In this document: piece after piece, positions 27,001 to 51,376 of the stretch
Layout: every line of letters starts with the position of its first letter
How positions within the stretch are numbered: position 1 is the first letter of the stretch
Virus record (IMG/VR): IMGVR_UViG_3300046536_000256
Coordinates: 1-64,000 of that record
Length of the DNA stretch: 64,000 nucleotides
Direction: 5' to 3' (one strand)
Notes under the pieces: model-generated
Databases searched by the model: none
What the model was told of the DNA's origin: nothing
Seen by the model: the letters and a program-made list of their open reading frames with translations, nothing else
Made by a program: the position numbers and the translations under genes

Positions 27001-27432
27001 TTACTTACCGAGGCTGTACGCTTCGTTGGTAAAGGTTAGTTTACGGCCCGCCCAATCGGTTAATACGGTTTGGCACGCCAGGATGTCATACTGGTTAAAG
27101 TCGTAGGTCAAACTCATGTGCGGAATGTAACCCGCATACGGAGTCTCGTAACCAGCGGCTTTAAGGCGGAGGTGTTCTTCTTGCAAGTCCTTACTGGTCA
27201 AACGAAAGATCAAACCGTCACCCAGAATCTCCAACGCCACGACATGCGCTTCGAAGATTCGTGTAGGGTCCAGAACAGCTAGGGGTTTATCGATATCCCG
27301 CTCATCGTAGATCAGCGTTGAGTGGAAGTCATGCTTGGGTGCAGGAGCGATGCCAGCAGCACTCAGAAGAGTAATCAGCTCTGCTTCGAAGTCACTGGTC
27401 AGTTCAACCGAGATGTAGCTGTAATCCATCAT
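27001..27432 (-). CDS. 2H phosphoesterase, T4 57B/Acb1-like
   Basis: Two HxT/S motifs, FHSTLIY and YIPHMSLTYD, ~60 aa apart in a 143-aa protein; start reassigned to MMDYSYI. Confidence 0.75.
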   Translation of the reverse strand: MMDYSYISVELTSDFEAELITLLSAAGIAPAPKHDFHSTLIYDERDIDKPLAVLDPTRIFEAHVVALEILGDGLIFRLTSKDLQEEHLRLKAAGYETPYAGYIPHMSLTYDFNQYDILACQTVLTDWAGRKLTFTNEAYSLGK

Positions 27433-27440
27433 CAGGCGCC

Positions 27441-28160
27441 TCAGGAAGGGAAGGGGGTGTCCAATACAATCCCTTGGTGGTTGTCGACGATGTCCAAACA
27501 ACGGAACACAGCAAAGACCCCCTTGTGTTCAGTCGACAGCCGGTTCGCTTCTTCCATCGCCAGCGCCTTGGTCTGATGACGATAAGGAACGTTGTGGATG
27601 TTGACCGCGCCGGTTTGGGTTACCTTACCGATAATGAAACGACCCAGCGTCTTGGCGTACTTCGGTTTGTAACTTGCAGTGCCAGCCAGCGTGAGTTTGT
27701 TGTGGTACATCTGGAAACCTTCCCAGCGTGCATTCACCCACTGCATGACGTACTTGTCGCGGGAATCACGGTCCAGTACCTTGGGATCGAACGAGCCTTC
27801 TTCAAACAGCAGGTTCTCGAACTCTTCCCGTAAGGTGCAGTTCTTGTTATCCGGACGAGCAGCCACCGGAGGCATGCCATGACCCTGTTGCAATTCGCGA
27901 GTAGTGCGGCGCGTTAGGGGAATGGCCACGACGTAAGGATCCGTGTCGTTAGCCGGGGTGTAGACCATTACTGGTGCATCTTCTTTGACATTTGGACCAA
28001 TGCGTTCGTGCAGGACTTCTACCGCTTCTAACAGAGCGGCTTCAACGTTAGGTTGCCCCAACTCTACGGTGCGCTTGTTTACCCATGCTTGATCAATTGC
28101 GCGCAGCGAGAGTGGTTCGGTGGACAAGAAATCCACCGGAGTCAGTTCTTGAACAGTCAT
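27441..28160 (-). CDS. hypothetical protein
   Basis: 239 aa; C-terminal PYRHQTKALAMEEANRLS...FAVF motif of a type common in phage proteins. Confidence 0.7.
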   Translation of the reverse strand: MTVQELTPVDFLSTEPLSLRAIDQAWVNKRTVELGQPNVEAALLEAVEVLHERIGPNVKEDAPVMVYTPANDTDPYVVAIPLTRRTTRELQQGHGMPPVAARPDNKNCTLREEFENLLFEEGSFDPKVLDRDSRDKYVMQWVNARWEGFQMYHNKLTLAGTASYKPKYAKTLGRFIIGKVTQTGAVNIHNVPYRHQTKALAMEEANRLSTEHKGVFAVFRCLDIVDNHQGIVLDTPFPS

Positions 28161-28180
28161 TGCTTATTCTTTCCTTGAGT

Positions 28181-28648
28181 TTATTCGTGGCTACCCGGTA
28201 CATCGAAGTTTGGTAGCCCTGGAAGGTCTCCGTCCAGAATCTCGGAGACCCAGCGACCGCCGGCCATTTCAATCGCACGCCAATCAGCAGTTCCGCCGAT
28301 TTGTTTGGCGTACTCGTTTAGCAAACGCGGGTGATAGTTGTGGTCGCCCATGAGACAATGGCCGAGGCGATCAGCGATTCTGGAAAGGTCATCGTGATCA
28401 GCACCTTCTACCCGACCATCCGGGTGCAGGACTTGGACGCCGTACCACTTGCAATAGTTTTCCATCGTCACAATGGGTTTGCCGAAAGTAGACGGCGACT
28501 GACACAGCAGCGGAATGCCGCGTTGACTTACGTAGACCTTTGTCTTCGGTTGCCCCGGAACTGTGACCCACTGGATGATGTGTGGGTCACTCTCTTTATT
28601 ACGCCCCGGAACTTCTGCGGGTGCTTCTGGTTGAATTTCGTTCGCCAT
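28181..28648 (-). CDS. hypothetical protein
   Basis: 155 aa, GGAGA SD. Confidence 0.65.
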   Translation of the reverse strand: MANEIQPEAPAEVPGRNKESDPHIIQWVTVPGQPKTKVYVSQRGIPLLCQSPSTFGKPIVTMENYCKWYGVQVLHPDGRVEGADHDDLSRIADRLGHCLMGDHNYHPRLLNEYAKQIGGTADWRAIEMAGGRWVSEILDGDLPGLPNFDVPGSHE

Positions 28649-28926
28649 CTTTGTTTCTCCCCTGAAGAAGGTTGTTTAGGTCCGAATATCTTGTCGTGGA
28701 ATTTCATTGAAGCCACCATACCGAACGCAGCCCCACACCCCGCACTTATCCCAATGGTCCACTCCCCCTTAACTACTAGGGTAATAGCGGCTACGTCAAA
28801 CGCCGCCATTAAGAACGATGTGAAAAATACAGAGCGGGTGTGGTTACCTATTACGTTCTTGTACTGGAACCCTTTTAGAAACACCGCACAAAAAGACGAT
28901 CCAACACTAAGAGCATATAACAGCAT
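28528..28926 (-). CDS. small multi-pass membrane protein
   Basis: Three hydrophobic helices with a GCGAAFG glycine motif; tail overlaps the next gene by ~120 nt. Confidence 0.65.
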   Translation of the reverse strand: MLLYALSVGSSFCAVFLKGFQYKNVIGNHTRSVFFTSFLMAAFDVAAITLVVKGEWTIGISAGCGAAFGMVASMKFHDKIFGPKQPSSGEKQRWRTKFNQKHPQKFRGVIKRVTHTSSSGSQFRGNRRQRST

Positions 28927-29414
28927 TAGCTTAATCCGCTGTATTCAGTGTCATGGGTGGTAGGTTTGGCGGCAGCGTCTTTAGCGATCTGGTCCGCCTC
29001 TTCGTTATCAGGGATACCGGAGTGAGCCTTAACCTTAATGAACTTAACCTTATTCACCCTGAGCAACTCGTTCAGGATGATCCACAGGTCTTTGTTCTTG
29101 ACCATCTCGCCGTTGCGGGTAAGCCAGTCATTACGGTACCAGTTCTTGACCCACTTAGTCGAACCGTCAATGGTGTACTGTGAGTCGGTATAGATGTTGA
29201 TCCGGGCGTTCGGACCAAACTCCTCCAGCGTGGCAATTACTGCCATGATTTCCATGCGGTTGTTGGTAGTTAAGTAATAACCCTTGGAGAGTGTGACCTT
29301 CTGGTCTCCGCATCTCACCACAGCCCCATATCCGCCAGGCCCCGGGTTGCCCAAGGCGCTACCGTCAGTATGCACCTCGTAAACAATCACCGGAGCCTTC
29401 TTAGCTTTTGCCAT
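28926..29414 (-). CDS. rnhA: ribonuclease HI
   Basis: TDGSALGNPGPGGYG, TTNNRME, YTDSQY, VKNKDLW, KVKAHSG, NEEAD. Confidence 0.97.
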   Translation of the reverse strand: MAKAKKAPVIVYEVHTDGSALGNPGPGGYGAVVRCGDQKVTLSKGYYLTTNNRMEIMAVIATLEEFGPNARINIYTDSQYTIDGSTKWVKNWYRNDWLTRNGEMVKNKDLWIILNELLRVNKVKFIKVKAHSGIPDNEEADQIAKDAAAKPTTHDTEYSGLS

Positions 29415-30353
29415 CTAACACACCGCGCTATGCCGTAAGTATTTCAAATGAAAGGCCTTCTCTATTATCTTCAATAGATCGACCCGAGAGTTAATGCAGT
29501 CCCGAATATACCGGAGTTGATCCAAGATTAATTCTTCGCCCCGTTCTTGCAGTATCCGGAACAGTTGGTCGTCAAAATTGGGATGACCGAATTCAATGTG
29601 AAAACGATTACCCCTGAGATCGGGCGCAACCGCCCAAGCATCTTTAGCCGTTTGAAAGGCATACAGGGTAGTCCGTGGCAGAGTGATCTCCAAGAAGAAC
29701 ATCCGGCTACGGATATACACTGTGGGTGCTGTTAACCGTACACTAGTCCAAAATACATCGGAAATGTATAACAGTCCTACACAGTTGACGTGGCTATTCG
29801 TTGCATTCACATGTGTAAGATCGATGTCGGCGTTAGTAAAGAATGTGCAGTGCTCCAGACTACAGTCTACGATACTGACAGTAGACTTGGTTGAAATCAC
29901 CGAACAGGATTCAATCCAACAGTTAGAAATCCAAGCATTTTTAGAGACGGCGGCATCTAAGAGCTCTACCTCGTCAAACGTTACCCCCGTGTAACTGTTT
30001 CGTTCTTTACCGTCACTGACAAGCACATCAGAGATGGTGTAGTTACACCCGATGCTGTAGATGTTGGCAACGGCGCAACGCCCGTGAAAGGTGTCGTTCT
30101 TACTCGTGCAGTTCTTGAGTACCACATCGCAGTACTCAAGGTCCTCAATATCCTCGTCCTCGTTCACCTGAAGTGACAGGTATTTGTTCGAGTCCACCTC
30201 CACGATGGATTCAGGACAGAGGCTGTATTTCAACATGTACTGCCCAATCGGGAAGTAGTAGCGGTCAACGCCCTCAATAGGTGCCGCGAGTTCCGGGAGG
30301 GGCATCGCGTTCAGCTTTACCCCGTCCAAATACAGACCCGGTTTTTGTGTCAT
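29415..30353 (-). CDS. beta-helix-like repeat protein, paralog 3 of 3
   Basis: Periodic I/V-x-N/D/S-C/S repeats; shared N- and C-terminal motifs with its neighbours. Confidence 0.75.
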   Translation of the reverse strand: MTQKPGLYLDGVKLNAMPLPELAAPIEGVDRYYFPIGQYMLKYSLCPESIVEVDSNKYLSLQVNEDEDIEDLEYCDVVLKNCTSKNDTFHGRCAVANIYSIGCNYTISDVLVSDGKERNSYTGVTFDEVELLDAAVSKNAWISNCWIESCSVISTKSTVSIVDCSLEHCTFFTNADIDLTHVNATNSHVNCVGLLYISDVFWTSVRLTAPTVYIRSRMFFLEITLPRTTLYAFQTAKDAWAVAPDLRGNRFHIEFGHPNFDDQLFRILQERGEELILDQLRYIRDCINSRVDLLKIIEKAFHLKYLRHSAVC

Positions 30354-31288
30354 ATTGGATCTCCTAACGTTCTTTCGAATTCAGCCCACAGGACCTGGAT
30401 GATTCTCCGGCGAGAACGAATGCAATCTACCACGTAATGATAGATGTCTTTCGGCAGAGCCAGTTCACAGTCAACCAATAACTCGGTCAACTTGGCCTCG
30501 AACTCTGGGTCATCCACCGGGACGTTAAACCCACCGCCTTGCCGGGTGATGGCAAACTCATCATTCCCCGTCTGATAACAGTACAGTGTCAGGTTAGGGA
30601 AATCCAAGCTGAAGAAGTACAAGCGGTTAGGGATGTGGCAGTCATCCACCTTCAGGTACATCTCGTTCAAACGGCTGTCGATTATCCGGATGAAATTCGC
30701 GGCATGTACACTGGCGTCGTTGAACTTACTCCCCTCCAGAACCAACGCTCCCTTAGAAGAGAACGACGAGTTCTTCATCGTGGACCCTTCGATACGTGCC
30801 TGACCCTCTGTGTGGACCGTGGAGTTGATGATTGACGAGTTGAGTACGAAGCTACCATCAGAGATCGTAGCGTTCTCCAAACGCGAGCTGATGACCGTCT
30901 GGTTGACTAACGGGTGCAGACGCGCGGTTTGCATCGACGAACGCGAGATATCCGAGTTCACGATGTTGCAAGCATTGGTCACCGTGTTGCTCAATACGCA
31001 GTTACCAGTAAAGGTATCGCGGTAACTGCTGCTGTTCGTGACGGTTACCCACGCGTGATTCTCGTCATCATTGTCCTCTTCGATTTCCAAGTCGAGGTAA
31101 GCAGCAGAGTCAATCTTGACCACCGAGTGTTCATCAAGAAAGAAGTGGAGTGTTAGGATCCCCACGGCTACTCGGTATTGATCGAAATCCCCAACACCGC
31201 CTTCATCGTCAACAGAGGGGTAAGTGTTTAGCCGGATAGGTTCCAGCTTGTGACCGTCAATGTATACGCCAGTTTCGTGTTCCATCAA
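30350..31288 (-). CDS. beta-helix-like repeat protein, paralog 2 of 3
   Basis: GVYIDGHKL, NSSSYRDTF, IPNRLYFFSLDFP, YVVDCIRSR. Confidence 0.75.
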   Translation of the reverse strand: MMEHETGVYIDGHKLEPIRLNTYPSVDDEGGVGDFDQYRVAVGILTLHFFLDEHSVVKIDSAAYLDLEIEEDNDDENHAWVTVTNSSSYRDTFTGNCVLSNTVTNACNIVNSDISRSSMQTARLHPLVNQTVISSRLENATISDGSFVLNSSIINSTVHTEGQARIEGSTMKNSSFSSKGALVLEGSKFNDASVHAANFIRIIDSRLNEMYLKVDDCHIPNRLYFFSLDFPNLTLYCYQTGNDEFAITRQGGGFNVPVDDPEFEAKLTELLVDCELALPKDIYHYVVDCIRSRRRIIQVLWAEFERTLGDPI

Positions 31289-31344
31289 AAAGCTCCTAGC
31301 AAAACATAACCCACCGGAGTTTCCTCCGGCGGATTAGTGTTCAG

Positions 31345-32808
31345 TTAGACTGCGTAGATGTCGTCCCAAGGCCTTGTGCGGTCACCAACTTCGCGGACAA
31401 GCTGTCTAGCTTCATCCAACAGGCGAACGACTTTCAAACGAGACGTGATCGAGTCAGTCAGGTAACTCGCGATGCTGCGAGTCAGTAAGGTTGGTTGTGT
31501 GTGAAACCCTTCAGGGTCCATTGACAACTGCATAGCAATGAACTTCTGAATATCTTCGTCCGGAGTATCCAGACGCATGCGCTCCATGCTGTGTTGCTGA
31601 GTGCCCAGATCGAAATCCCGGCGAGTGGAGCGAACGAAGTACAACTTGTGTTGCGGGGTATCCAGCTCCAGGTAGGAGAACTTGTTGGGAACGTACACCG
31701 ACGGAGCGCTGATGTGCACACCATTGAAGCGGGTGTGTTTCACCAACAACTCACCCTCAGCGATTACACCCGATTTGTTCAGGTGGACATCTTTGACGGT
31801 AATACGGGTACCGCGAACGTTGGCGTCGAACAACTGGCTACCGGTAACCGTGACGTACCCGCTGCCGCTGACTTGAGTGTCGTGGATTTGTGAGTCGCGG
31901 TAAACACCGTGGGACACTGCCGAGTTAAACACCGAGGTACGCTTGAACTGACCCTCTTTAACGTTCATGCGTTCACGGATGTCTTTCGTCGGCACAGCTG
32001 GCTCTTCGCTCAGGTGGTTAAAGCCATACCCGTAACGATGGTCCACTTCCTTGGTACGCGCCAGTACAGAATTGTTCAGCACGTTAAAGGAAGACTCGGT
32101 GTTCACCAACAGTGATTCACCGATTGGCAGATCCTCGTTGCTGGACGAGTTGATCAAGACCAGTGTGCCATGAATGGCGAGGTTGGTTGGAGCGTGGCTG
32201 TTATGACGCGTTTCACCGCCACCCAGGGTAACTGTGGAGTTACCGTCCAGCAAGTAGTACGATTCAATCCCGTTGTTCTTCAACAGATACAGCGAGAAGA
32301 CTTTGTCGGCGTACAACTGGCTGACCTGGTGTGGCAAGTAGAACGCCTTCGGCAACAGGCTGTTACGGATGCGGTTGTAATCGACTTTCAAGCCGGTCGC
32401 AATCGGTTCCTGCAACACGCCTTCAAACATGAAGGTACCGGTGGCCTGAACCGATTGCAGCGCGTTGGCCACCGCTTCGGAGATCTTGGCTTCCGGGTCG
32501 AGGCCAGCCGCCTTCAGCACCTTTTCGGCGTTACGGATCTGGCGGTCGGTTGGCACTTCTTCGGCAACATCGGTGCCCGCAGGGGTTATGTGAGGCGCGG
32601 TAAAGCTCTTAGGATTATCCGAAGTCTCTTGAGCGATAGTCCCGATAGGTTCTTTGAAGGCCTTTTCCAGGTTCTTCTCGAACAGACTGTTTGCGGCTTC
32701 CTGAGTGAAACCTACTTCCTTTGCGGTGTCTAACGCCTTGAGCGCTTCGGCCACAGGCTTCAGGGTAAATTTATCCCCGTTGGCTGGTTTCTTTTCCACT
32801 TTACTCAT
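31345..32808 (-). CDS. beta-helix-like repeat protein with N-terminal extension, paralog 1 of 3
   Basis: Start reassigned to MSKVEKK (overlaps the ligase stop); VPNKFSYLELDTP, YLTDSITSR. Confidence 0.75.
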   Translation of the reverse strand: MSKVEKKPANGDKFTLKPVAEALKALDTAKEVGFTQEAANSLFEKNLEKAFKEPIGTIAQETSDNPKSFTAPHITPAGTDVAEEVPTDRQIRNAEKVLKAAGLDPEAKISEAVANALQSVQATGTFMFEGVLQEPIATGLKVDYNRIRNSLLPKAFYLPHQVSQLYADKVFSLYLLKNNGIESYYLLDGNSTVTLGGGETRHNSHAPTNLAIHGTLVLINSSSNEDLPIGESLLVNTESSFNVLNNSVLARTKEVDHRYGYGFNHLSEEPAVPTKDIRERMNVKEGQFKRTSVFNSAVSHGVYRDSQIHDTQVSGSGYVTVTGSQLFDANVRGTRITVKDVHLNKSGVIAEGELLVKHTRFNGVHISAPSVYVPNKFSYLELDTPQHKLYFVRSTRRDFDLGTQQHSMERMRLDTPDEDIQKFIAMQLSMDPEGFHTQPTLLTRSIASYLTDSITSRLKVVRLLDEARQLVREVGDRTRPWDDIYAV

Positions 32809-34768
32809 GAAGTGCTCCTGCTTTAATCTGTTGAATGAGTGCATCGATGCTCGAGGCAGCGGTTGCGTTAATCGTAGGGATATGCTGTTCAGCTGCTTTT
32901 AGTATCTTGCTCTGACCAGGCTTCTCCCCGATGAGGAGGTAATTGCAATCCTTGGTGAGTTTATCCACCAGTTCAATACCATGATCCCCGAAGTAGCTTT
33001 CCAGTTCTTCCCGGGCTTGACCGATGGTACCGGTGATGCAGACCTTCAGTTCCGTAATCGGACCCTCAGGCTCAACCAGAACATTAAGGTTCGCCAAGAT
33101 ACCTTCTGCGTTCTCCACGAACTCTTCACTTTCAAAGCTCAGGGCAATCGGGATAGACAAACCAGCAGAGAACCCTGGGATCTTGATCAGTTCGTCAGCA
33201 TTACCCAACCACTGAAGCAAGTTCACATTCCCCGGCCATGCGGCGGCCAGCTTCTTGGCACGCGTCAGATCAACACCAGGCAGACCCAGCGCCTTAATGA
33301 CACGGGACAACGGTTGACCTTTGCGCACTTCCTGAATGCGGTTGTAGATCTTCTCACCTACCACACGTTCATTTAGAAGAAGGATATCCACAGGCAACTT
33401 GATATAACCCTGTTCGATCAACTCGGCAACAGTCACAGGACCCAAGTCGTCGATATCCAGCGTGCGTTTGTGCGCAAGGTTCACGCAACGCAGCACAAGC
33501 TGTGCAGGACAGTCTGTGACGTTGGTACAGATGAGATCGGCACTCTGCTTGGTGATGCGCTTCTCCAGCGGCATGCAGCAGCTAGGGCACTCCTCAGGCG
33601 CTTTGAAGAGTTCACCTTCGCCATGTTCAATCACACGGTTCAGACGAGGGATCACATCCCCGTTACGAGTCACACCGATTACCGAACCTTTACGCAGCTC
33701 CACCGCTAGGAACTGTTTATAGTTGTCCAGATACGTGCGAGCACAGATCACCCCACCAATGCGGGTAGGAGCGTAAAGCCCCACCGGCACCACACGACCA
33801 GTACGAGTGGTATTCCACACGATATCGGTCAGAGTAGTAGCAACCTCCACATCTGGGTACTTGTACGCCAGCGCCCAGTTAGGGTACTTGTTGGTGACCC
33901 CCAGCTTTTCTTGCAATTCAAAGTCGTCGACCTTGATCACAATACCATCGGCTGGCCAGTCCTTGCTGTTGATGTTCTCCCGGATCGCTTCCAGCGACGC
34001 AACAGGCGCGCAATGGAAACCCAGCAGGGTCAGGTGGTTACGCAGTTCGCTGTACTTCTTCTTGCCCAAGGTACTGCTGCAATAGTAAGCGCCGAACCGC
34101 AGGATCCCTTTAACCGCGTGGTTCTGGTTCTCCGGCAAAGCACGAATCCAACCGCTGACTGCGTTACGAGGGGTAGCGGCTTGTTTAAGCGCTGTCTCGT
34201 TATACAGTTCAAAGTCGTGACAGGTGATGTGCCCTTCACCGCGGATGTTGACAGTGCCCGGGACAGGAACGTTGTTCAGGTCAGTCAGCATCCTTGGGAT
34301 GTTCAGACCGAACAAAGGCAAAGCATGGGTAACGTCTTCGCCCACCAGACCGGACCCACGAGTCACCATGGATATCAGTGGACCGTCGACATACGTCAGT
34401 TCCAACGCAATACCGTCCAGCTTAAGTTCATAGAAGAACAGAGTGTCTTCCGGGAACCGTGCGAGGAACTTGTCAACCGCGTCTTGGTTCAATCCCTTCT
34501 TCAAGCTCAGCATTGGGCTATCGAAGGTAACGGGTTTCAGGCCTTCATTAGTAGGCTCGTGGATTGGCACGGGTTTGCGAGCGGTTTCGAACAGTTCGGC
34601 AATTTCCGGGTGTTCCTCGGCCAACTCTTCGAAGCGCTCGACCATCTGGTCGTACAGATAATCTGGGATCTCAGACGTGTCCTTATTGAAATAAAGATCC
34701 GCGTGGTACATGATGTCACGATTTAAATCGTTCATCTCTGTGAAGATCGTTTTATGTTTTGCTTTCAT
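32801..34768 (-). CDS. ligA: NAD-dependent DNA ligase
   Basis: ELKLDG (KxDG), TRGSG..GEDVT, DGIVIK, OB domain, Cys4 zinc finger, HhH motifs, BRCT; start reassigned to MKAKHK. Confidence 0.97.
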   Translation of the reverse strand: MKAKHKTIFTEMNDLNRDIMYHADLYFNKDTSEIPDYLYDQMVERFEELAEEHPEIAELFETARKPVPIHEPTNEGLKPVTFDSPMLSLKKGLNQDAVDKFLARFPEDTLFFYELKLDGIALELTYVDGPLISMVTRGSGLVGEDVTHALPLFGLNIPRMLTDLNNVPVPGTVNIRGEGHITCHDFELYNETALKQAATPRNAVSGWIRALPENQNHAVKGILRFGAYYCSSTLGKKKYSELRNHLTLLGFHCAPVASLEAIRENINSKDWPADGIVIKVDDFELQEKLGVTNKYPNWALAYKYPDVEVATTLTDIVWNTTRTGRVVPVGLYAPTRIGGVICARTYLDNYKQFLAVELRKGSVIGVTRNGDVIPRLNRVIEHGEGELFKAPEECPSCCMPLEKRITKQSADLICTNVTDCPAQLVLRCVNLAHKRTLDIDDLGPVTVAELIEQGYIKLPVDILLLNERVVGEKIYNRIQEVRKGQPLSRVIKALGLPGVDLTRAKKLAAAWPGNVNLLQWLGNADELIKIPGFSAGLSIPIALSFESEEFVENAEGILANLNVLVEPEGPITELKVCITGTIGQAREELESYFGDHGIELVDKLTKDCNYLLIGEKPGQSKILKAAEQHIPTINATAASSIDALIQQIKAGALHE

Positions 34769-35261: not shown

Positions 35262-35735
35262 TCAGCCCTTGGCACGATCGGCCATGAACTGATTGAGCGC
35301 TGCAATGTCTTTCAGGTCCTGAGGTTCTCGGTGGGTATCAAGCCACTCGCGTTTCAGGCACTGTTTATACGTCAGCAACGTCATTGGATCAAAGCAGGTC
35401 ATGCCGTCAATTTCGACAGTATCGTGAGGAATGTCAAACGGCCGAACAATGCAATTGACCGACCAAAACAAGGTCTGTGATTTATCAAGCAGCCGGATAA
35501 TACCGGAACCCTCTTCACACCAGACTAGGCGTTGTTTTTCGTTCAGCTCCTTGAAACGTTCAGGGGAAACCCAAACGTTCAGGTCAAGTGTGCTTTCACG
35601 GATACCCATCGCCATGAGCGCGCCACCGCCGCCCAGTACGAGTTCACCTGGTTCGAACCACTTGGGGCCTTCAATAGCTGGCGCGTTGGTTGCCAGGTCG
35701 TACAGGCGCTTCAGTTGTTCTTTGTTCCAGATCAT
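35262..35735 (-). CDS. Pol-beta-superfamily nucleotidyltransferase-like protein
   Basis: LVLGGGGALMAMGIRESTLDLNV and C-terminal LLTYK...QDLKDI. Confidence 0.6.
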   Translation of the reverse strand: MIWNKEQLKRLYDLATNAPAIEGPKWFEPGELVLGGGGALMAMGIRESTLDLNVWVSPERFKELNEKQRLVWCEEGSGIIRLLDKSQTLFWSVNCIVRPFDIPHDTVEIDGMTCFDPMTLLTYKQCLKREWLDTHREPQDLKDIAALNQFMADRAKG

Positions 35736-36172
35736 TACGCCATCCTCGCGGTAAGTCGGGGTGATCGCACTAGAGATTCGAGTTGGACAATTTCCATGAG
35801 GTCCCGTTCCCGCTTATTAGGTTTACGGTTCGGCATGGCCGCCAAGTGACGCTTCTGTTTCAGCATCTCACTTGGACTATAGATCCAGACGTTGTCCACG
35901 CAAACAATCCCAGTGGTGTCACTGAGTTCGTGCAGGTCAATGAAAGGATCGTACTCAATACGGGGTGAAACGTTTTCTTCAAGAAGTACCGGTTTGGACA
36001 TACCAACCCATTTGAACGTCATGGGGGATACGTCCACATCCAGATCCACGGTTTCTTCGCGGACGTCCATCATCACTAATGCACCACCGGCGCTCAGTAT
36101 CACCAAATGTGCCGGATCACCCAGAGCTGTTACCAGTGCTTTGTAGCGTGATATCACTTGATCCCTGTTCAT
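35735..36172 (-). CDS. Pol-beta-superfamily nucleotidyltransferase-like protein
   Basis: ILSAGGALVMMDVREETVDLDVD (intact DxD) and C-terminal MLKQK...RERDLMEI. Confidence 0.65.
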   Translation of the reverse strand: MNRDQVISRYKALVTALGDPAHLVILSAGGALVMMDVREETVDLDVDVSPMTFKWVGMSKPVLLEENVSPRIEYDPFIDLHELSDTTGIVCVDNVWIYSPSEMLKQKRHLAAMPNRKPNKRERDLMEIVQLESLVRSPRLTARMA

Positions 36173-40576: not shown

Positions 40577-43465
40577 TTAGAACACGTCGCGATGCGTAAA
40601 GAACTGGTTAGGTCCATCCGCACCATCATCAACAAAGCAAGGGATCGCTGAACCGCGGCGAGTAGCACTAACAACGTGGTTACTCATCACCATGTAATCC
40701 TTAACCTGCTGAAGTACGCCGTTTACTGCAATGCCGAACATCACTTCATTGTTGGCGACCTCCCGACGGACATCAGAACCCAACACTGCAATAACGTCAC
40801 CGTAACGAACCAAGTAACAGTACGTGGTTCCCGCAGGGTTAACCTTGAGTGCAAATTCCTCACCCAAGACCATCGCTTTACCGCCAATCACCAACCGGCC
40901 GCCCGCAGGTACGCGAACCCACCCAGCTTCGTTGACGTTGAATGGATCAACCTTGGTCACACCACCCACTTCCAACATGGTGTTTGTGAAAGCCCCATTG
41001 GTTGCGTCGTATTGGAACACCCCCTTGTTAGGGATTAGAATCGGAGGAAGGAGTTCGTCCACCAAGTCAAACTGCTGGGTCCCTGGGTAGAGACGAACGA
41101 CGTTGGTCTTGACCGGTGTGAACGCCGGGAAGGTAGACCCCCCAAACCCAGCACAGGTAAAGCTGATGTCGCCGTAGTTGTTACCGAATGGACGGGTCAA
41201 CACAAAGCCGGTGGTGTTTGCGTCGATGTTGACGATTTGCAAGTCGGAGTAATCCATCCGCGTACCGTCACCCGAACCCGACTTCCGATTCCCTACAGCC
41301 ACAGGCCCGCTAGCCGCGGTTATCGGCTTCAACGCTACCCCGTTGGTCTGTTTAAAGTCCAACGTAAAGATGTTGTTGATCACCGAGTATCTTGCTGCTG
41401 CTGCTTCAGCGTAACTCACCCCGTCAGAGACCACCACGAGCGCCTTGGTGCCCGTTACCGCAAAGACCTGGATCTCTGGTACCCGGAGGGTTGGGTCAAC
41501 CCCTGGGTTGAGCACAGCAGCCCTGTCGGTTAGATCGCGCATTACCGCTTGCATACTGAGCATGCTTGCAACAGCCATCTCGACATCAGCACCGACTGTC
41601 AACACTTGGTTTGCGAACGTGACACTGGCTTTACCCACATGCCGGTTGGCCGACGTAAACGCCAACGCATTGTACCCAACACCCGCCGAGGCTTTGTTAA
41701 CCGCAACCGCCATCGACACCGGTATCAGTCCAATGTCATCCATTGGGGTTCTTACTTCCGGCAGCCTTACGCCAAACACACCATCACCCGTTTGAGTGCT
41801 AACGATGCTAGCGTTGTTCCACGTCAGCAACGACCAACTGAACAAACCAGTACCGGGATTCAACCCGTAAACCAGATGTTGAGTAACCGCCGCGTTATGG
41901 GTCACCGGGATAATACGCTCGGGCAATGGACCGAATGGTGCATGACGACTTGGGGCAAAGACTTCGGTTATTGCATCCGACGGGTCTGCCACAGGACGTT
42001 GAGCCAGCATCCAGTCGATCACACTGGTGTAATCCGTGCGGTAACGCTTAACCCGCATCGCCAGCTTAGAACTACGGGCTTTAACCATGAGCCCCGAGTT
42101 CAACAACACACCAGGCGACTGACTAATGTTGTTAAGATCGAATGGGTTGTTCACAGTGAAGAACGAAGACCCGGCCGTAGGCAACAAGTTCGCATCCAAG
42201 GTGTCCTTGACGCGACTCCCGATGGTTTTGAACAACGCTGTCCCACCGGCCACCAACGTACCCGGAATGATTGACTCGGTAAACGAGAGCACCAGCTTAC
42301 TGACCAATGCGCCTTGAGTGACAACCACCCCCACGCTGACGTTCAAGTACATCTCGAAGTCAGTGGAGTTCCACACCAACACAGTAACCGGATCAGGTCG
42401 AGCCGGGTCCCCGGCAATGGTAGCGCCAGCCGGCAAGGTGAGGAAGTCGGCAAGGTTATACGTGTGGAAGCCGTTAGCCGGACCCGGGGCGGGTGAGGCA
42501 CTTCCCATCTTGTCAAATGACGCCAGGTAAGAGCTGTTCACCAGTTCCGTCATGGATGGAGCCGTTGTCACGGCATTGACCGAGAAGAACCGATGATCAA
42601 TCCGCAACACACCCGCTGCCAACGCTACCGAGATCCCCAAGCCTTTATAGACCGCGTTGGCGAAGTTGTTGTAGAGGAGGTAGTTACGGTTAGCCGCTGG
42701 AAGAGGCAGTGTGGAAGCGAAGTTGTAAATCTTCTTATCGCCCAAGGGACGGAAGAACCCCACCTTACCGTCGGTTGTATCCCCGCCGGTCATGTTCCAG
42801 TTCGCCCCGGTGTAGCGCGCGGCTAGGTTAGTGACCTCACTGAGACGAGCACGGGACAAGCCTTTCAACGGCAACCCCACAAACAAACTCTGTTTACTGT
42901 AACGCCCTTCATCCGACCGTGGGGAATAGATCAGACGATCGCCATCAATCAGAATCGGCACCCGGCCATTGGACAGCAGATAACGGCTCGGTTCAGGTGT
43001 TGCTGGGAGAACCGTTTCGTAATCGTCCGGGTAGTAGTACGACGCGAACTGAAACACCCCGTTCTGCTGGTAAAGAGTGGGGTCGAAGTCAGCGGTGTTC
43101 GCATCCAAGGAGGCCTTGGCCCCAGCAGGCGTTACAAAGGCGTTTACGCTGGCGTAACTGATGGACTCAGCCAATGTAGCGGTTCGGAAGTTATCCTTCT
43201 TGTCGAGCCCCACAGTGTCTTTGGTCTCACCGTGCGCCGCACCCCGTATTGCCAAGTGTGCATCAATCGGGGCAATACTGCTGTTGATCCACTGAGTAAC
43301 GTGGGTATCGAGCCCATCCAGCTGATCTTTAATGCTCTTATTGAATTCGCGAACCCGGTCTTCAGCTTTAACCGTGAAGTCATTGAGCTTGTGGATCACC
43401 GCCCCAAAGGTAGGTTCCGGATTCTCAATGACAGGAGGTTCCGCTATAGGCCTGACAATAATCAT
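40577..43465 (-). CDS. large tail/baseplate-associated structural protein (paralog)
   Basis: 962 aa, beta-rich; HGETKDTVGLDKKDNFRTATLAE repeat and C-terminal TRRGSAIP shared with its neighbours. Confidence 0.7.
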   Translation of the reverse strand: MIIVRPIAEPPVIENPEPTFGAVIHKLNDFTVKAEDRVREFNKSIKDQLDGLDTHVTQWINSSIAPIDAHLAIRGAAHGETKDTVGLDKKDNFRTATLAESISYASVNAFVTPAGAKASLDANTADFDPTLYQQNGVFQFASYYYPDDYETVLPATPEPSRYLLSNGRVPILIDGDRLIYSPRSDEGRYSKQSLFVGLPLKGLSRARLSEVTNLAARYTGANWNMTGGDTTDGKVGFFRPLGDKKIYNFASTLPLPAANRNYLLYNNFANAVYKGLGISVALAAGVLRIDHRFFSVNAVTTAPSMTELVNSSYLASFDKMGSASPAPGPANGFHTYNLADFLTLPAGATIAGDPARPDPVTVLVWNSTDFEMYLNVSVGVVVTQGALVSKLVLSFTESIIPGTLVAGGTALFKTIGSRVKDTLDANLLPTAGSSFFTVNNPFDLNNISQSPGVLLNSGLMVKARSSKLAMRVKRYRTDYTSVIDWMLAQRPVADPSDAITEVFAPSRHAPFGPLPERIIPVTHNAAVTQHLVYGLNPGTGLFSWSLLTWNNASIVSTQTGDGVFGVRLPEVRTPMDDIGLIPVSMAVAVNKASAGVGYNALAFTSANRHVGKASVTFANQVLTVGADVEMAVASMLSMQAVMRDLTDRAAVLNPGVDPTLRVPEIQVFAVTGTKALVVVSDGVSYAEAAAARYSVINNIFTLDFKQTNGVALKPITAASGPVAVGNRKSGSGDGTRMDYSDLQIVNIDANTTGFVLTRPFGNNYGDISFTCAGFGGSTFPAFTPVKTNVVRLYPGTQQFDLVDELLPPILIPNKGVFQYDATNGAFTNTMLEVGGVTKVDPFNVNEAGWVRVPAGGRLVIGGKAMVLGEEFALKVNPAGTTYCYLVRYGDVIAVLGSDVRREVANNEVMFGIAVNGVLQQVKDYMVMSNHVVSATRRGSAIPCFVDDGADGPNQFFTHRDVF

Positions 43466-43527
43466 AGCTCTACTCCGTGTTGAATGTGGAAAGTCAAAGG
43501 GGAATTACTTCCCCATGACCGTGGTCG

Positions 43528-46500
43528 TTACGGCAACAGCTCAGCGTTATGCAGGAAGGCAAACGTACCTTCGTCCTGAGGGAACCCGGTACTGACTGGG
43601 ATAATGCCACCCTCACGCGTGTAACTCAGCTGATACTGTCCGACCATCAACGGCTGGTGCCGAGTAATCGAGAGGATCTGCTGGCTGTTGGTTACCACTG
43701 TTGCCGCTTTGAGCATGTTGCCGGATTTACGCATCTTGACTTCGGTCACAAGATAACGAGGTTTGTCGTCCTGTACCGTTGCGTAAATGTAGAACGTTTT
43801 GTTTTGTGGCGCTGGATCAATGTCACGCAAATCGATCGTCCCACCCTCCATGGCGTACGCTGTGCCGTTTACCAACATCCGGATGTTATCTTGCAGGAAG
43901 AGAGTCCAACCTGTTTCCGGATAAGCCGAGGCCACCAAGTAATAGTCGAGGCTATTATCCGGGTTGGTCTTCTTGATCAACGCACCCGCCCCGCCTGTGA
44001 GCATGTACGGCTGTGGGTTACCCGCCGAGATCGAGGTGCTGTCAGGTGTGTTGCCAGCAAGGGTAACGTCCGCCATCCCGATCTTAGGAAGCATGGTGAC
44101 AATGTCCCCTTGCGTCCAACTGGATGAACCGCCGTAAACACCGGTGACCTTGTTAGTTACTAGGTCAATGTCGAAAAGACACAGTTGTTTGGTGTTAATG
44201 GTCTGTGTGGTGACAGTCGAAAACGGACCCATCACGTACACTTTCAGCTTGCCATTGTCCCGGTACGCCGTGAGCAACGCTTTCTGTTTCAACGCGGTGG
44301 CGAGTAGCAGGTTAGCGTCGGCCATCTTCACGTTAACGCAGGTGCGTACATGAGGAGGGGCATCCAACACCGTGATGTCTTTAATCCAGAACACGCCCGG
44401 ATGATCAGCGTTGGGGGTTTCGACAACCGGGGTAAACAGCACCACTTGGGTACGGGTTTGCGAGAGGGTCGCGTCGAAGAAGTAGATCAGCGCGATACCA
44501 ATGTTAAGCCCGTTGAACATCCCTCCCGCTTCACTGCCCAGAACGTTCAAGCTGAAGCCCCAGTACTTAGTAGACTGGAACACAGCCGGGATCATCGCTT
44601 TAAGCTTGTCGATGATGTTCTGGCGAATGCCGTAGAACGAATCCGCGGCATACGTCGCTTTCTTCAATCCCGGGTCCAACGTTCGAGTAACCGTCCGTGG
44701 GAAAGAGATCAACACGTTGTTACCAGCGGGTGCTTTGAACAACGTATTACGCGGGAACGTTTGGTTAGCCGAAGAGTAAGACGCCCAACCGCAGGCACTG
44801 AAACTCGTGCTCCCACACTCCACACCCCCAGCCGCCAACTCAGCCGCAGAACCAGTCATACCGATGGTGAGGTCGTTATGTCCTAGGTTGGTCTCGTACA
44901 CCGCCCCTGTTAATGGGCGCGAGAAAATGTCCCCTATCGAGAGGTTGTTGACCCCCGGACGGACTTGATACCCACCCGTGACTAACCGCGTGTAAATTTT
45001 GCGGGTACCCGAGCTCTGTTCCACTGCCCCAAAGATCTCGCTGTCCGCGGTGTAGGTAACCGATCCTGGGTAGGTCCCGTTAAGAATCGGAGACTTCAGC
45101 ACGGGCTTCAAGATACGACGGAAGCTCAACTGAATCGCTTGAAGATCCAAACGACCACTTAACAGACTGGCATCCGATGTCTTGTTCTTGTAACGACTGA
45201 CCTCGGCAACCGACGGGAAGATGTTGCCATCCTGAATTGTCGAGGTGACGACGTCGCCGTTATCCAAAATCACCGTAGAGGCATTACTGGACTGGAAGGT
45301 GGCGTTGTAAAAATTGGTAAGGTACAGGTCCATGTACCCTGACCGTTCCGCTGGGGTGGAGTCCGTGAAGCCAACACTCAGCGCGGGTAATTTAGCGATT
45401 TGGGTCATCACCCCCGTAACACAGTTGAGCTCCCACCCGATGTCGGTCATCAATGTAATGTTGATGTTAACACCCGGCGCTGTGTAAATAGCGGCAAACC
45501 CCGGCATGATGTGGATGTAGTTGACGTTCGGCACACCCGGCTTCGGACACGAGACCACCATCGTCCGACCACTTTTAGACAGCGTAGCGATTGGCTGACG
45601 GAACGACCAAGGGCCGTACTTGATGATGGTGTTGTTGCCGTCCTTTGTGGTTGCGTTGGGTTGAACGTAACTGGCGTTGGTGAATGGGGTTCCATCCCAA
45701 TCCGTGTACGTTACCTTCAGCAGTTGCCAAGCCACAGCAAGACCGCTTTGAATATCCGACACCTTAACCCGGAAGAACGCATAGTTGTCAGCGTAAGCCG
45801 TCCCATAGTTCTGCACCAATACCAGATAGTCGCCCATGTGATGGATGGTGGCTCGGTTGTTGTTCACCCACGGGGCGCCAGCGAACAGTGCGTTAACAGC
45901 GGTCATGTCAACCCGGACATACCGATGCGCACTTGGATCAAAGGTGCCGTTGGTCAAGCAGACGAACCAGTCAGGGGTAGCAGGGTTGCCCACCATCATC
46001 GCCTTACCGTTACTGCCGGCAATAATCGCGGTGGGGTTAATCCCCAAAGCTACCAATGAAGCCGGAGCATACTTGTACCCGGTGTAAATGATCTTCCCCG
46101 CTGGCTGGTCATAGTTCTCTACGTATGAATAGTAGAGCCCTTGCTGACGACCGTCGTAGTGGTTGGTGAGCATCATCAACATCCCACTGTTTTCCATACA
46201 GAAACCAGAGGTGTCGTAGAGCGCGCCCAAACCTTCGAAGGACCCATCGATGTTCGGCGGAATGTAGCTGTCGCCCGCAAAACGGCTGAGCGGCATGATT
46301 CCCTGAAACATTGCTGCGTCAGTGTCAGCCTTATACGACTTGGCTAACTGACCCACACCCATCGGGGTACTGAAGACGTCACTACGAATCCCCGCCAGTT
46401 CTTCTGCCAGTGTTGCGGTGGCGAAGTTGTCGTGGTTCCCCATGGTGATGTCAAACTTGGTGGTCTGGTGGGGAACGTTGTAATTCTCGTCGTGGGCTTT

Positions 46501-47115
46501 CAGTTGGTTCAGACGAGTGGTCTTCCCCGTCTTTAAACGATCGAAGGCGAGGCGTGAGGCAGCGGTAACCTTATCGTTGGCAGCAGGGTCGCGTGAACTG
46601 GAGAGCTTTTCCAGGTAAACGAAAAACCAGGTCAGCTCATACCAGTCAGTGATCTCGGTTTTAATGCTGTGCGAATGCAGCGACGACGGCAGGGTCGGCG
46701 GCATGTTAAAGACTTTGTCCCAGGTCAGTGGGCGTTTGCCGTTCTGAATCTGGTCCATCCAGTTGACCAAGTCATTGCGCGGAACGAAGTACGCCCCGAT
46801 GCTTTGATAGTCAACCGAAACTTGGCTGTTAGCATCCAAGATGTTTTGTGGCAAACGAATGAACGTTTTGATAGAACGCCCGGTAACCTCGCAGAAAGGA
46901 ACAAACTCCTCTTCCAAGAAGTAATCCCGGTCAAGCACCATTACCGCGCCACGTTGGTCGTACACGGTTACAAGCGCGGGTTCAGCGAAGAAGGGTGCAC
47001 CGTTCGGGAGAACCCACGGACAAGTCTTGTCGGTGAGCGCAATGACTTCCCCGACAACAGTGTTGACGGGTTCAGTGCCATGAATGTCAAACTTTACCGG
47101 TCTGATAAGGTCCAT
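43528..47115 (-). CDS. large tail fibre/baseplate structural protein (paralog)
   Basis: 1195 aa; APFF anchor module, NIDGSFEG, TFYIYA...ELLP ending. Confidence 0.75.
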   Translation of the reverse strand: MDLIRPVKFDIHGTEPVNTVVGEVIALTDKTCPWVLPNGAPFFAEPALVTVYDQRGAVMVLDRDYFLEEEFVPFCEVTGRSIKTFIRLPQNILDANSQVSVDYQSIGAYFVPRNDLVNWMDQIQNGKRPLTWDKVFNMPPTLPSSLHSHSIKTEITDWYELTWFFVYLEKLSSSRDPAANDKVTAASRLAFDRLKTGKTTRLNQLKAHDENYNVPHQTTKFDITMGNHDNFATATLAEELAGIRSDVFSTPMGVGQLAKSYKADTDAAMFQGIMPLSRFAGDSYIPPNIDGSFEGLGALYDTSGFCMENSGMLMMLTNHYDGRQQGLYYSYVENYDQPAGKIIYTGYKYAPASLVALGINPTAIIAGSNGKAMMVGNPATPDWFVCLTNGTFDPSAHRYVRVDMTAVNALFAGAPWVNNNRATIHHMGDYLVLVQNYGTAYADNYAFFRVKVSDIQSGLAVAWQLLKVTYTDWDGTPFTNASYVQPNATTKDGNNTIIKYGPWSFRQPIATLSKSGRTMVVSCPKPGVPNVNYIHIMPGFAAIYTAPGVNINITLMTDIGWELNCVTGVMTQIAKLPALSVGFTDSTPAERSGYMDLYLTNFYNATFQSSNASTVILDNGDVVTSTIQDGNIFPSVAEVSRYKNKTSDASLLSGRLDLQAIQLSFRRILKPVLKSPILNGTYPGSVTYTADSEIFGAVEQSSGTRKIYTRLVTGGYQVRPGVNNLSIGDIFSRPLTGAVYETNLGHNDLTIGMTGSAAELAAGGVECGSTSFSACGWASYSSANQTFPRNTLFKAPAGNNVLISFPRTVTRTLDPGLKKATYAADSFYGIRQNIIDKLKAMIPAVFQSTKYWGFSLNVLGSEAGGMFNGLNIGIALIYFFDATLSQTRTQVVLFTPVVETPNADHPGVFWIKDITVLDAPPHVRTCVNVKMADANLLLATALKQKALLTAYRDNGKLKVYVMGPFSTVTTQTINTKQLCLFDIDLVTNKVTGVYGGSSSWTQGDIVTMLPKIGMADVTLAGNTPDSTSISAGNPQPYMLTGGAGALIKKTNPDNSLDYYLVASAYPETGWTLFLQDNIRMLVNGTAYAMEGGTIDLRDIDPAPQNKTFYIYATVQDDKPRYLVTEVKMRKSGNMLKAATVVTNSQQILSITRHQPLMVGQYQLSYTREGGIIPVSTGFPQDEGTFAFLHNAELLP

Positions 47116-47181
47116 TGTGTTAGCCTTTTAAAAGAGAGGGGAGGAGGGGTTCACCCTGCCTCCTCTCCAACACGTTGTTGT

Positions 47182-50799: not shown

Positions 50800-50800
50800 A

Positions 50801-50832
50801 CAACTGATCTATGCGGTGGCATAGATCAGTTG
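50801..50832. terminator. 14-bp stem-loop
   Basis: CAACTGATCTATGC-GGTG-GCATAGATCAGTTG after the Tfa stop. Confidence 0.7.
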
Positions 50833-50841
50833 CGGGGCTGG

Positions 50842-51369
50842 TTATGGAGAGGTTGGCCAGTCAATGGTGGTTGGGTAACCGGCTTGTTGGTCGACCTTGC
50901 TCAACGCCAACTTGTAAGCCGCGTAAGCTTTAAAGGTCTTCGCGTCCGCATCGCTCAACAGTCCGGCAATGAAAGCATCCGCCATTCCGATCGTAGCTTG
51001 GTTGGCAACCCCCATCAACTGGTCACGTTGGGCCTGAGCGGCCAAAGACGCATCAAGAAGCCACACGGTACCATTCCAGGCGTAATGAACCCCAGGACAA
51101 GGAACCCGTGTATATTCACTAGGCAACTCCTCGAGGGTACGCCACTCCTTCGGAGCACCAGTGGTTACACTGTAGACCGTCCCACGTTGATCGATGACTT
51201 GGGTTGGAACCCCGTCAACGTTTACCCACACCTTACCGGCGTCTGCGGCCACCAACAGATCTTCCACCTCGATAGCGTTGCTCGGCAATGGGAAACCCAA
51301 CCCCGGAACTTCGCAAATGGTAATCGGTCCGTACAAAATACCCAGTTCATCGAATTCGTAAATATTCAT
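50842..51369 (-). CDS. tail fibre assembly chaperone (Tfa-like)
   Basis: DQRGTVYS..TG, HYAWNGTVW, helical C-terminus ending QQAGYPTTIDWPTSP; directly follows the fibre gene. Confidence 0.88.
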   Translation of the reverse strand: MNIYEFDELGILYGPITICEVPGLGFPLPSNAIEVEDLLVAADAGKVWVNVDGVPTQVIDQRGTVYSVTTGAPKEWRTLEELPSEYTRVPCPGVHYAWNGTVWLLDASLAAQAQRDQLMGVANQATIGMADAFIAGLLSDADAKTFKAYAAYKLALSKVDQQAGYPTTIDWPTSP

Positions 51370-51376
51370 AAATACC

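What the first reader, a model, noticed from the sequence alone, without database searches (positions are those of the whole stretch)
29415..32808. Three tandem beta-helix paralogs wedged between DNA ligase and RNase H
Seen, collinear motifs in all three: G(L/V)Y(L/I)DG.KL (two copies), (L/V)xNSSS/NCTS.(N/R)D, 5-6-residue I/V-x-N/D-S repeats, (I/V)(P/R)(N/S)(R/K)(M/L/F).(F/Y)LE(I/L), and Y(I/V/L).D(C/S)I.SR. There is no signal peptide or obvious catalytic motif, and all three overlap their neighbours. Inference: a diversifying family of cytoplasmic solenoid binding proteins (heterotrimer, defence-protein inhibitors or replication cofactors) rather than tail fibres.
Basis: partly seen in the sequence, partly recalled or inferred. 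Interest (0 to 1): 0.6.

Follow-up and report, generated by a model that had tools for sequence, protein, structure and literature searches.

The report
Variable solenoid gene array, jumbo phage
Three neighbouring genes of a rhizosphere jumbo phage encode fast-evolving beta-solenoid proteins of an unnamed family: related nucleus-forming phages keep one long copy beside their DNA ligase and add zero to about four short, very acidic copies, and the function is still unknown.

Summary
Three minus-strand ORFs are true paralogs: A (31345-32808, 487 aa), B (30350-31285, 311 aa) and C (29415-30353, 312 aa). They lie between an NAD-dependent DNA ligase and an RNase HI in a 233-kb phage related to EL and RisingSun.

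No Pfam, PHROG or NCBIfam model covers them. A profile finds about 120 cluster representatives among 1.84 billion proteins. These fall into a long class (420-550 aa) and a short class (300-360 aa).

The slot ligase-[family]-RNase H is conserved in EL, RisingSun, Miami, VP4B and metagenomic relatives. Each has one long copy followed by a hairpin, then 0 to about 4 short copies. Close relatives (ligase 91% identical) differ in which short subfamilies they carry.

The genes change 3-5 times faster at the protein level than the ligase, but remain under purifying selection.

AlphaFold gives a solenoid of about 18 residues per coil with a conserved C-terminal helix. Two models disagree on handedness. 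No catalytic residues are conserved. Short copies are strongly acidic (median pI 4.7); long copies are near neutral.

Best reading: non-enzymatic binding proteins. The long copy would be a core partner of the replication module. The short copies would be exchangeable acidic decoys against host DNA-binding or defence proteins. An obligate heterotrimer is unlikely. Function is untested.

The parts
32801..34768 (-). NAD-dependent DNA ligase (LigA type). It is the upstream anchor of the slot, and its last codons overlap the start of gene A by 8 nt.
   Evidence: Pfam DNA_ligase_aden 5e-37, OB, Nlig-Ia, BRCT and zinc finger. 91% identical to the ligase of relative L026 from the ATG at 34768. Overlap read.
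31345..32808 (-). Gene A, the 'long' family member (487 aa). Layout: a disordered Lys-rich N-terminal tail (about 1-80), two helices (88-123), an N-cap, a solenoid with a 255-276 loop, a C-cap, and a conserved C-terminal helix carrying Y..D.I.SR.
   Evidence: AGGAG lies 6 nt before the ATG. Orthologs at the same position: EL gp123, RisingSun gp111, Miami 069, VP4B gp173, L026 and L027.
31307..31336 (-). Terminator-like hairpin (13 bp stem, GAAA loop, then TGTTTTG) between A and B. It separates the ligase-A unit from the B-C-RNase H unit.
   Evidence: Fold energy -27.3 kcal/mol, z = -5.7. A hairpin of different sequence sits at the same position after the long gene in L026, L027 and EL.
30350..31285 (-). 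Gene B, a 'short' family member (311 aa, pI 4.65, net charge -23), subfamily s1.
   Evidence: AGGAG lies before the ATG. 72% identical to L026 s1. Placed in the s1 clade with SH-aLRT support of 96-99.
29415..30353 (-). Gene C, a 'short' family member (312 aa, pI 4.98, net charge -14, 12 Cys), subfamily sX. Its ATG overlaps the stop of B (ATGA).
   Evidence: Nearest relatives are P0004 (45%) and L004 sX (38%).
28926..29414 (-). RNase HI (162 aa), the downstream anchor of the slot. Its ATG directly follows the stop of C.
   Evidence: Pfam RNase_H 3.3e-41. Sequence at the junction read.

Best explanation
SHOWN.
- A, B and C belong to an unnamed, non-enzymatic-looking beta-solenoid family.
- Among named phages the family was found only in the EL / OBP / RisingSun-Joad / VP4B / Miami branch of chimallin-encoding (nucleus-forming) jumbo phages.
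- Each genome examined keeps one long copy just downstream of the NAD-ligase, followed by a hairpin.
- Some lineages have added one to about four short copies between that hairpin and RNase H.
- The short copies fall into old subfamilies that are gained and lost even between close relatives.
- All members share the caps and a C-terminal helix with an invariant Ser-Arg, while the coil surfaces vary.
- Short copies are strongly acidic and long copies are near neutral.

INFERRED.
- The solenoid is a rigid display surface, and the proteins act by binding rather than by catalysis.
- The conserved C-terminal helix packs on the solenoid or docks a conserved phage partner.
- The long copy is a core accessory made with the replication/repair genes.
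- The short acidic copies are exchangeable, nucleic-acid-like decoys or inhibitors of host DNA-binding proteins. Candidate targets are defence nucleases or sensors, or topoisomerase-type enzymes, in the manner of pentapeptide-repeat DNA mimics.
- This role would explain their turnover and fast divergence.
For: - Paralogy.
- Family size and the two length classes: 123 representatives at E<=1e-3 among 1.84 billion proteins. The tree separates long from short with only 2 changes, against 25 expected from shuffles.
- Conserved slot and variable copy number.
- A hairpin follows the long gene in four genomes.
- Divergence, window against L026: ligase 91%, Acb1 94%, RNase H 80%, B 72%, A 59% identity. 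The window lacks subfamilies s2 and s3; L026 lacks sX. dN is 0.06 for the ligase against 0.18-0.31 for B and A.
- Solenoid models.
- Conserved positions are confined to the caps and the C-terminal helix, with no conserved His, Cys, Lys or Glu.
- Charge: 43 short members have median pI 4.72 and net charge -19. 53 long members have median pI 6.35 and net -3, and the homologous domain alone still has pI 6.10. The extra negative charge sits in the N-cap and the coils.
- The only named sequence neighbours are pentapeptide-repeat DNA mimics: MfpA 4e-7, QnrB1 2e-6 and AlbG 2e-5 in a profile search of PDB sequences, and language-model features at 0.82-0.86.
- Not in the virion gene block.
- RisingSun gp111 was not detected in lysate mass spectrometry.
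- An Acb1-type anti-CBASS gene lies in the same conserved block.
Against: - There are no functional data for any member, and no partner is known.
- The pentapeptide similarity is weak: per-stretch E-values are 0.01-0.25 and the period is not that of the family.
- The two AlphaFold models disagree on handedness, so a rod that mimics DNA is not established.
- Acidity is common among phage early proteins.
- dN/dS of about 0.1-0.2 shows no gene-wide positive selection.
- The long copy is a clade-wide core gene coupled to the ligase, which fits a housekeeping role at least as well as an arms-race role.
- These phages already shield their DNA in a protein shell, so DNA-mimic decoys may be less needed.
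Confidence: 0.4

Rival explanations
1. Replication or repair accessory. The family provides scaffold or adaptor proteins of lagging-strand maturation, holding ligase, RNase H or DNA together inside the phage nucleus. The short copies would be sub-functionalised duplicates.
For: - The slot between ligase and RNase H is conserved across distant genera.
- The long gene overlaps or abuts the ligase stop in the window, L026, L027 and EL.
- One long copy is present in every genome of the branch that was examined.
- The short copies are joined to RNase H.
Against: - The family diverges far faster than ligase and RNase H. Against EL the long copy is 20% identical where the ligase is 46%, and against RisingSun it is almost undetectable where the ligase is 40%.
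- Short copies come and go between close relatives.
- The profile found nothing in phiKZ, 201phi2-1, PhiPA3, SPN3US, phiEaH2 or Goslar, which replicate without it.
- In RisingSun, Miami and VP4B, small unrelated ORFs separate it from the ligase.
Confidence: 0.25
2. Virion-associated proteins: either small tail spikes or fibres with a beta-helix, or proteins packaged in the head and ejected with the DNA.
For: - Many phage beta-helices are tailspikes, and they appear among the structural matches.
- Jumbo phages of this group package many non-structural-looking proteins.
- The baseplate and fibre block begins only about 7 kb away.
Against: - The genes sit inside a replication/repair block, on its strand and joined to its genes.
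- The coils are short (about 18 residues) with no Pfam Beta_helix signal; 1 of 98 members matched.
- RisingSun gp111 was not among the proteins detected in lysate mass spectrometry. That survey was shallow, however.
- No signal of a trimerisation or receptor-binding domain.
Confidence: 0.08
3. An obligate heterotrimer, or other fixed hetero-oligomer, of A, B and C.
For: Tandem arrangement. The C-terminal helix is conserved in all three.
Against: - Copy number at the slot ranges from 1 to about 5, and the subfamilies present differ between close relatives.
- A is separated from B and C by a hairpin.
Confidence: 0.05
4. Left-handed beta-helix enzymes of the hexapeptide acyl/acetyl-transferase type.
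For: - The coil length is about 18 residues.
Against: - No member matches Pfam Hexapep.
- The residue period is 5/10/18, not 6/12/18.
- No conserved His or other catalytic residue lies in the coils.
- The other model is right-handed.
Confidence: 0.04

Closest known systems
Pentapeptide-repeat proteins that mimic DNA (MfpA, Qnr, AlbG/McbG)
   Same: - Non-enzymatic beta-solenoid with short strands and Ser/Asn/Asp-rich turns.
- A C-terminal helix after the coils.
- A strongly acidic surface in the short copies.
- They are the only named sequence neighbours by a profile search of PDB sequences (E 4e-7 to 1e-3) and by language-model features.
   Different: - The Pfam pentapeptide models are not met: 1 of 98 members matched, and B scores 14.6 bits against a cut-off of 27.
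- Coils are about 18 residues, not 20, and there is no 15/20 period.
- Extra N-cap and C-cap domains are present.
- Handedness is unresolved.
- The dimer test gave no answer.
- These are phage-encoded genes in tandem variable arrays.
Left-handed beta-helix (hexapeptide-repeat) scaffolds without catalysis, such as CcmM N-domain, dynactin p25/p27 and complex-I gamma-CA subunits
   Same: - Triangular coils of about 18 residues.
- The best-confidence model superposes on them at rmsd about 2 A over 80-85 residues.
- A helical C-terminal extension.
- They are used as binding scaffolds.
   Different: - No hexapeptide sequence signature.
- The second model has the opposite hand.
- There is no evidence of trimers.
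EL gp123, RisingSun gp111, Miami CPT_Miami_069, VP4B gp173 and gp175 (all annotated as hypothetical proteins)
   Same: True family members at the same slot between ligase and RNase H.
   Different: - EL, RisingSun and Miami have only the long copy; VP4B has a long and one short.
- The window phage has a long and two short copies.
- None has been studied. Nothing was found in the paper library for EL gp123, and gp111 does not occur in the RisingSun genome paper.

Membership tests
Pentapeptide-repeat proteins (Pfam PF00805 / PF13599 / PF13576) | The sequence matches the Pfam pentapeptide models at their gathering score. | tested here: not met
   B gives 14.6 bits against a cut-off of 27; A and C give no match. 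Only 1 of 98 family members matches PF00805 at E<0.01.
Pentapeptide-repeat proteins (Pfam PF00805 / PF13599 / PF13576) | Regular 5-residue repeat giving four-faced coils of 20 residues. | tested here: not met
   Autocorrelation of hydrophobic residues peaks at 5, 10, 18, 23 and 28. It is flat or negative at 15 and 20. In the model of C, strands recur three per coil of about 17-18 residues.
Pentapeptide-repeat proteins (Pfam PF00805 / PF13599 / PF13576) | Right-handed quadrilateral beta-helix. | tested here: inconclusive
   The model of C (7 sequences, pLDDT 74) fits right-handed helices at rmsd 2.4-3.7. The model of A (98 sequences, pLDDT 82) fits left-handed helices at rmsd 2-4.7 and right-handed ones only at 11-14.
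Pentapeptide-repeat proteins (Pfam PF00805 / PF13599 / PF13576) | Acidic, DNA-like surface, and a dimer formed through the C-terminal helix. | tested here: inconclusive
   Acidity holds for short copies (median pI 4.72) but not for long copies (6.35). Dimerisation could not be judged.
Hexapeptide-repeat left-handed beta-helix transferases (Pfam PF00132 and relatives) | Hexapeptide sequence signature with a 6-residue period. | tested here: not met
   None of the 98 members matches a Hexapep model at E<0.01. Autocorrelation at lag 6 is negative.
Hexapeptide-repeat left-handed beta-helix transferases (Pfam PF00132 and relatives) | Conserved catalytic residues (typically a His) at a trimer interface. 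| tested here: not met
   No conserved His, Lys or Glu in the coils. Conserved columns are in the caps and the C-terminal helix only. Trimer formation was not tested.
Pectate-lyase-like right-handed beta-helix of phage tailspikes (Pfam PF13229 / PF12708) | Match to Beta_helix models, long coils (22 residues or more), and a position among virion genes. | tested here: not met
   1 of 98 members matches PF13229 at 0.0017. Coils are about 18 residues. The genes lie in the replication block.
The unnamed ligase-RNase H slot family (EL gp123 / RisingSun gp111 type) | Profile match over the whole solenoid plus the C-terminal Y..D.I.SR helix, and a position between the NAD-ligase and RNase H. | tested here: met
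   A, B and C match the family profile over their full length, and the Ser-Arg pair is invariant. Synteny is shown.

The most novel reading that the evidence does not exclude
The short acidic solenoids would be a new class of phage-encoded nucleic-acid mimics or decoys. Nucleus-forming jumbo phages would swap them as cassettes to neutralise host DNA-binding defence or topology enzymes. The long copy would be a clade-specific core factor of the phage-nucleus replication machinery that shares the same docking helix.
Probability: 0.2. Interest if true: 0.7.

Novelty: new variant of a known kind. Interest (0 to 1): 0.42.

Why it matters
Nucleus-forming jumbo phages are a model for viral compartmentalisation and candidates for phage therapy, yet most of their genes are unnamed.

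This work defines one such family and gives it several handles:
- a fixed address between ligase and RNase H;
- a core long form;
- a variable set of acidic short forms;
- a signature motif.

That makes the family directly testable in culturable phages (EL, Miami, RisingSun/Joad, VP4B).

If the short copies prove to be decoys for host enzymes, they would add a solenoid-based class to the known phage counter-defence proteins. If the long copy proves to be a replication factor, it would mark a branch-specific solution to lagging-strand maturation inside the phage nucleus.

Tried and rejected
- **Family libraries.** Pfam, PHROGs and NCBIfam scans of A, B and C gave nothing above threshold.
- **Named phages by BLAST.** tblastn of B against 50,697 phage records gave no match. 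A matched only EL-like phages at about 20% identity. RisingSun gp111 matched only itself and Joad.
- **Viral-contig scan with B:** nothing.
- **Structure searches.** Foldseek against PDB with the long model gave nothing at E<=1e-3. The ESM-Atlas shape search gave nothing meaningful. Atlas look-ups yielded only leads below 0.9, and the Atlas's own models are of low confidence.
- **Homodimer test of C** (complex prediction, 96-row alignment): verdict 'no answer', score 0.00. This counts neither for nor against binding.
- **Chimallin.** A search of the phage's own genome with phiKZ chimallin found nothing by the genome search or phmmer. This is inconclusive because chimallins are very divergent. 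The assignment to the nucleus-forming group rests on kinship with EL and RisingSun/Joad, which are listed among chimallin-encoding phages in the supplement of PMC10299810.
- **Public runs.** Only four rhizosphere metagenomes hold the DNA.
- **Rhc paper.** The RNase H-clamp preprint concerns a different, two-domain RNase H and does not mention this family.
- **Bactofilin-like polymer:** considered and set aside. Both solenoid ends are capped and no Pfam match was found.
- **Genetic code.** No alternative genetic code was used or needed.
Full report
**1. What is there**

The window is the first 64 kb of a 233,283-bp viral record with direct terminal repeats. On the minus strand lie three ORFs:
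- A: 31345-32808, 487 aa.
- B: 30350-31285, 311 aa.
- C: 29415-30353, 312 aa.

Upstream is an NAD-dependent DNA ligase and downstream an RNase HI, both by Pfam.

A, B and C each have an AGGAG 6-7 nt before the ATG. The junctions are as follows:
- Ligase and A overlap by 8 nt.
- B and C overlap by 4 nt.
- C and RNase H abut.
- A and B are separated by 59 nt that contain a 13-bp hairpin followed by a T-rich tail.

The three proteins are paralogs: B/C E=7e-34, A/B 7e-12, A/C 2e-9. There are no further copies in the genome. Not every gene overlaps its neighbour. A also has a different architecture, with an extra N-terminal region.

**2. Which phage**

- The only DNA-level matches among 50,697 phage records are the RNase H genes of Erwinia phages RisingSun and Joad.
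- Gene order matches Pseudomonas phage EL: baseplate protein, SbcC-like, small ORFs, ligase, family member, RNase H, then a 2H-phosphoesterase.
- The window also carries an EL-style GroEL-like chaperonin.
- EL, Joad, OBP, VP4B, Miami and others are listed together among chimallin-encoding (nucleus-forming) phages in the supplement of PMC10299810.
- I could not find chimallin in this genome with the phiKZ protein. That test is too insensitive to count.
- The DNA occurs, identical, in four rhizosphere metagenomes. No RNA run holds it.

**3. The family**

No Pfam, PHROG or NCBIfam model covers the proteins. The word search found two relatives of C among 5.8 billion clusters.

Because these searches left the proteins open, I ran the exhaustive profile search. 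It found 123 representatives at E<=1e-3, and 92 at <=1e-10, among 1.84 billion proteins. These fall into two length classes: about 300-360 aa and about 420-550 aa.

A tree of the shared domain separates long from short with two changes, where shuffled labels need about 25. B falls in subfamily s1 and C in subfamily sX. Two further short subfamilies, s2 and s3, are absent from the window.

Among named phages, the profile gave these results:
- Found: EL gp123, RisingSun gp111, Miami 069, VP4B gp173 and gp175.
- Found weakly: AH04, CF8 and OBP.
- Not found: phiKZ, 201phi2-1, PhiPA3, SPN3US, phiEaH2 and Goslar.

BFVD structure matches name the same uncharacterised proteins.

**4. A fixed slot with variable content**

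Wherever context was available, the family sits between the NAD-ligase and RNase H.

| Genome | Long copies | Short copies |
|---|---|---|
| EL, RisingSun, Miami | 1 | 0 |
| VP4B | 1 | 1 |
| Window | 1 | 2 |
| 232-kb food-metagenome phage | 1 | 2 |
| L025/L026 | 1 | 3 |
| Another contig | 1 | 3, then a LAGLIDADG-like ORF |
| L004 lineage (contig cut; long copy not on it) | not seen | s2, sX and s3 together, so probably 4 |

A strong hairpin follows the long gene in the window, L026, L027 and EL. Its sequence differs between genomes but its position is the same. The short genes have therefore accumulated between that hairpin and RNase H.

**5. Tempo**

Identities to three relatives:

| Compared with | Ligase | Long copy (A) | Other genes |
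|---|---|---|---|
| L026 | 91% | 59% | Acb1 94%, RNase H 80%, B 72% |
| L027 | 58% | 26% | not compared here |
| EL | 46% | 20% | not compared here |

C's nearest relatives are only 38-45% identical.

dN is 0.06 for the ligase, 0.18 for B and 0.31 for A. dS is saturated at 1.25-1.67, so dN/dS of about 0.05-0.18 is only indicative. The family evolves fast and turns over, yet on average it is under purifying selection. Gene-wide positive selection is not shown.

**6. Fold**

AlphaFold2 gives a beta-solenoid for both proteins modelled:
- C with 7 sequences: pLDDT 74.
- A with 98 sequences: pLDDT 82, pTM 0.73, and above 90 in most coils.

In the model of C an N-terminal beta cap precedes the coils. 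In both models a beta C-cap, a short helix and a long C-terminal helix follow them. In A, about 80 disordered residues and two helices come before the N-cap.

Coil length is about 17-18 residues, judged from the strand pattern and from autocorrelation peaks at 5, 10, 18, 23 and 28.

The two models disagree on handedness:

Paralogs cannot differ in hand, so one model is wrong. The deeper, more confident model is left-handed. The sequence-based neighbours are right-handed pentapeptide-repeat proteins. I leave handedness open.

**7. Clues to function**

- Conserved columns lie in the caps (LD..S.V; NS.S..D.F.G...L.N; NKF....I..P) and in the C-terminal helix (S...Y..D.I.SR, with Ser-Arg invariant). 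The coil surfaces vary, and no catalytic-type residue is conserved.
- Short members are uniformly acidic (median pI 4.72, net -19, n=43). Long members are near neutral (median pI 6.35, net -3, n=53), and this holds within the homologous domain too. The extra negative charge lies in the N-cap and the coils.
- A profile search of PDB sequences returns almost only pentapeptide-repeat proteins: MfpA 4e-7, QnrB1 2e-6, AlbG 2e-5, SV2C. Each aligned stretch is weak, with i-E 0.01-0.25. Language-model features point the same way, below the reliable range.
- The block also holds an Acb1-type 2H phosphoesterase, an SbcC-like protein and, in relatives, a DHH phosphoesterase.
- RisingSun gp111 is not among the 31 proteins seen in a lysate proteome.

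**8. Interpretation**

The shown facts point to non-enzymatic binding proteins built on a rigid solenoid. There are two roles: a core long form tied to the ligase, and an exchangeable set of acidic short forms tied to RNase H.

My best guess (confidence 0.4) has two parts. The short forms act as nucleic-acid-like decoys or inhibitors of host DNA-binding proteins. The long form is a branch-specific accessory of the replication module.

The main rival (0.25) is that all of them are scaffolds of lagging-strand maturation. Other readings are less likely: virion proteins (0.08), an obligate A-B-C heteromer (0.05) and hexapeptide-type enzymes (0.04).

The homodimer prediction gave no answer and is not evidence either way.

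**9. Comparison and novelty**

The family works most like pentapeptide-repeat DNA mimics, or like non-catalytic left-handed beta-helix scaffolds. It fails the sequence and periodicity tests for both families, so it is not a member of either.

It is an unnamed family whose known members are all annotated as hypothetical. I rate it a new variant of a known kind, namely beta-solenoid binding proteins.

Interest is moderate. The architecture, fixed slot and cassette-like turnover are clear and testable in culturable phages, but the function remains inferred.

No alternative genetic code was used.

Noticed in passing
window 27001-27501 (minus; likely start at 27429): A 2H-phosphoesterase matches Pfam Acb1 (anti-CBASS), 2e-13, and is 94% identical to its counterpart in a relative. 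The syntenic genes in EL (gp126), RisingSun (gp120) and VP4B (gp179) are annotated 'RNA ligase', which may be a misnomer. A 17-bp terminator-like hairpin follows the gene at 26998-26961.
   Followed up: partly
window 35262-35735 and 35735-36172 (minus): A second tandem pair of paralogs (157 and 145 aa, both phrog_12854, function unknown) lies between the SbcC-like gene and the ligase. Pairs of similar size occur at the same place in L026, L027 and EL.
   Followed up: no
window 3731-5434 (minus): A GroEL-like chaperonin (phrog_5725 9e-128; Pfam Cpn60_TCP1). This supports kinship with the EL group.
   Followed up: no
window 40577-53233 (minus): Four large paralogous genes of tail-fibre or virion-protein type (962, 1195, 1205 and 618 aa) share an N-terminal module (phrog_2163) and have different C-terminal parts. 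This is a second diversified gene set, this time clearly structural.
   Followed up: no
relative contig from SRR33038036 (no DNA held): A 298-aa ORF with a faint LAGLIDADG match sits between the last short copy and RNase H, where other relatives have subfamily s3. A homing endonuclease may contribute to cassette turnover. The same contig has a Kelch beta-propeller gene next to Acb1.
   Followed up: no
[not shown]
   Followed up: partly
window 28000-33900, in public runs: The phage DNA is present, with identical sequence, in four rhizosphere metagenomes from four studies. In one of them contig depth is about 926, so the phage was very abundant in that sample.
   Followed up: partly
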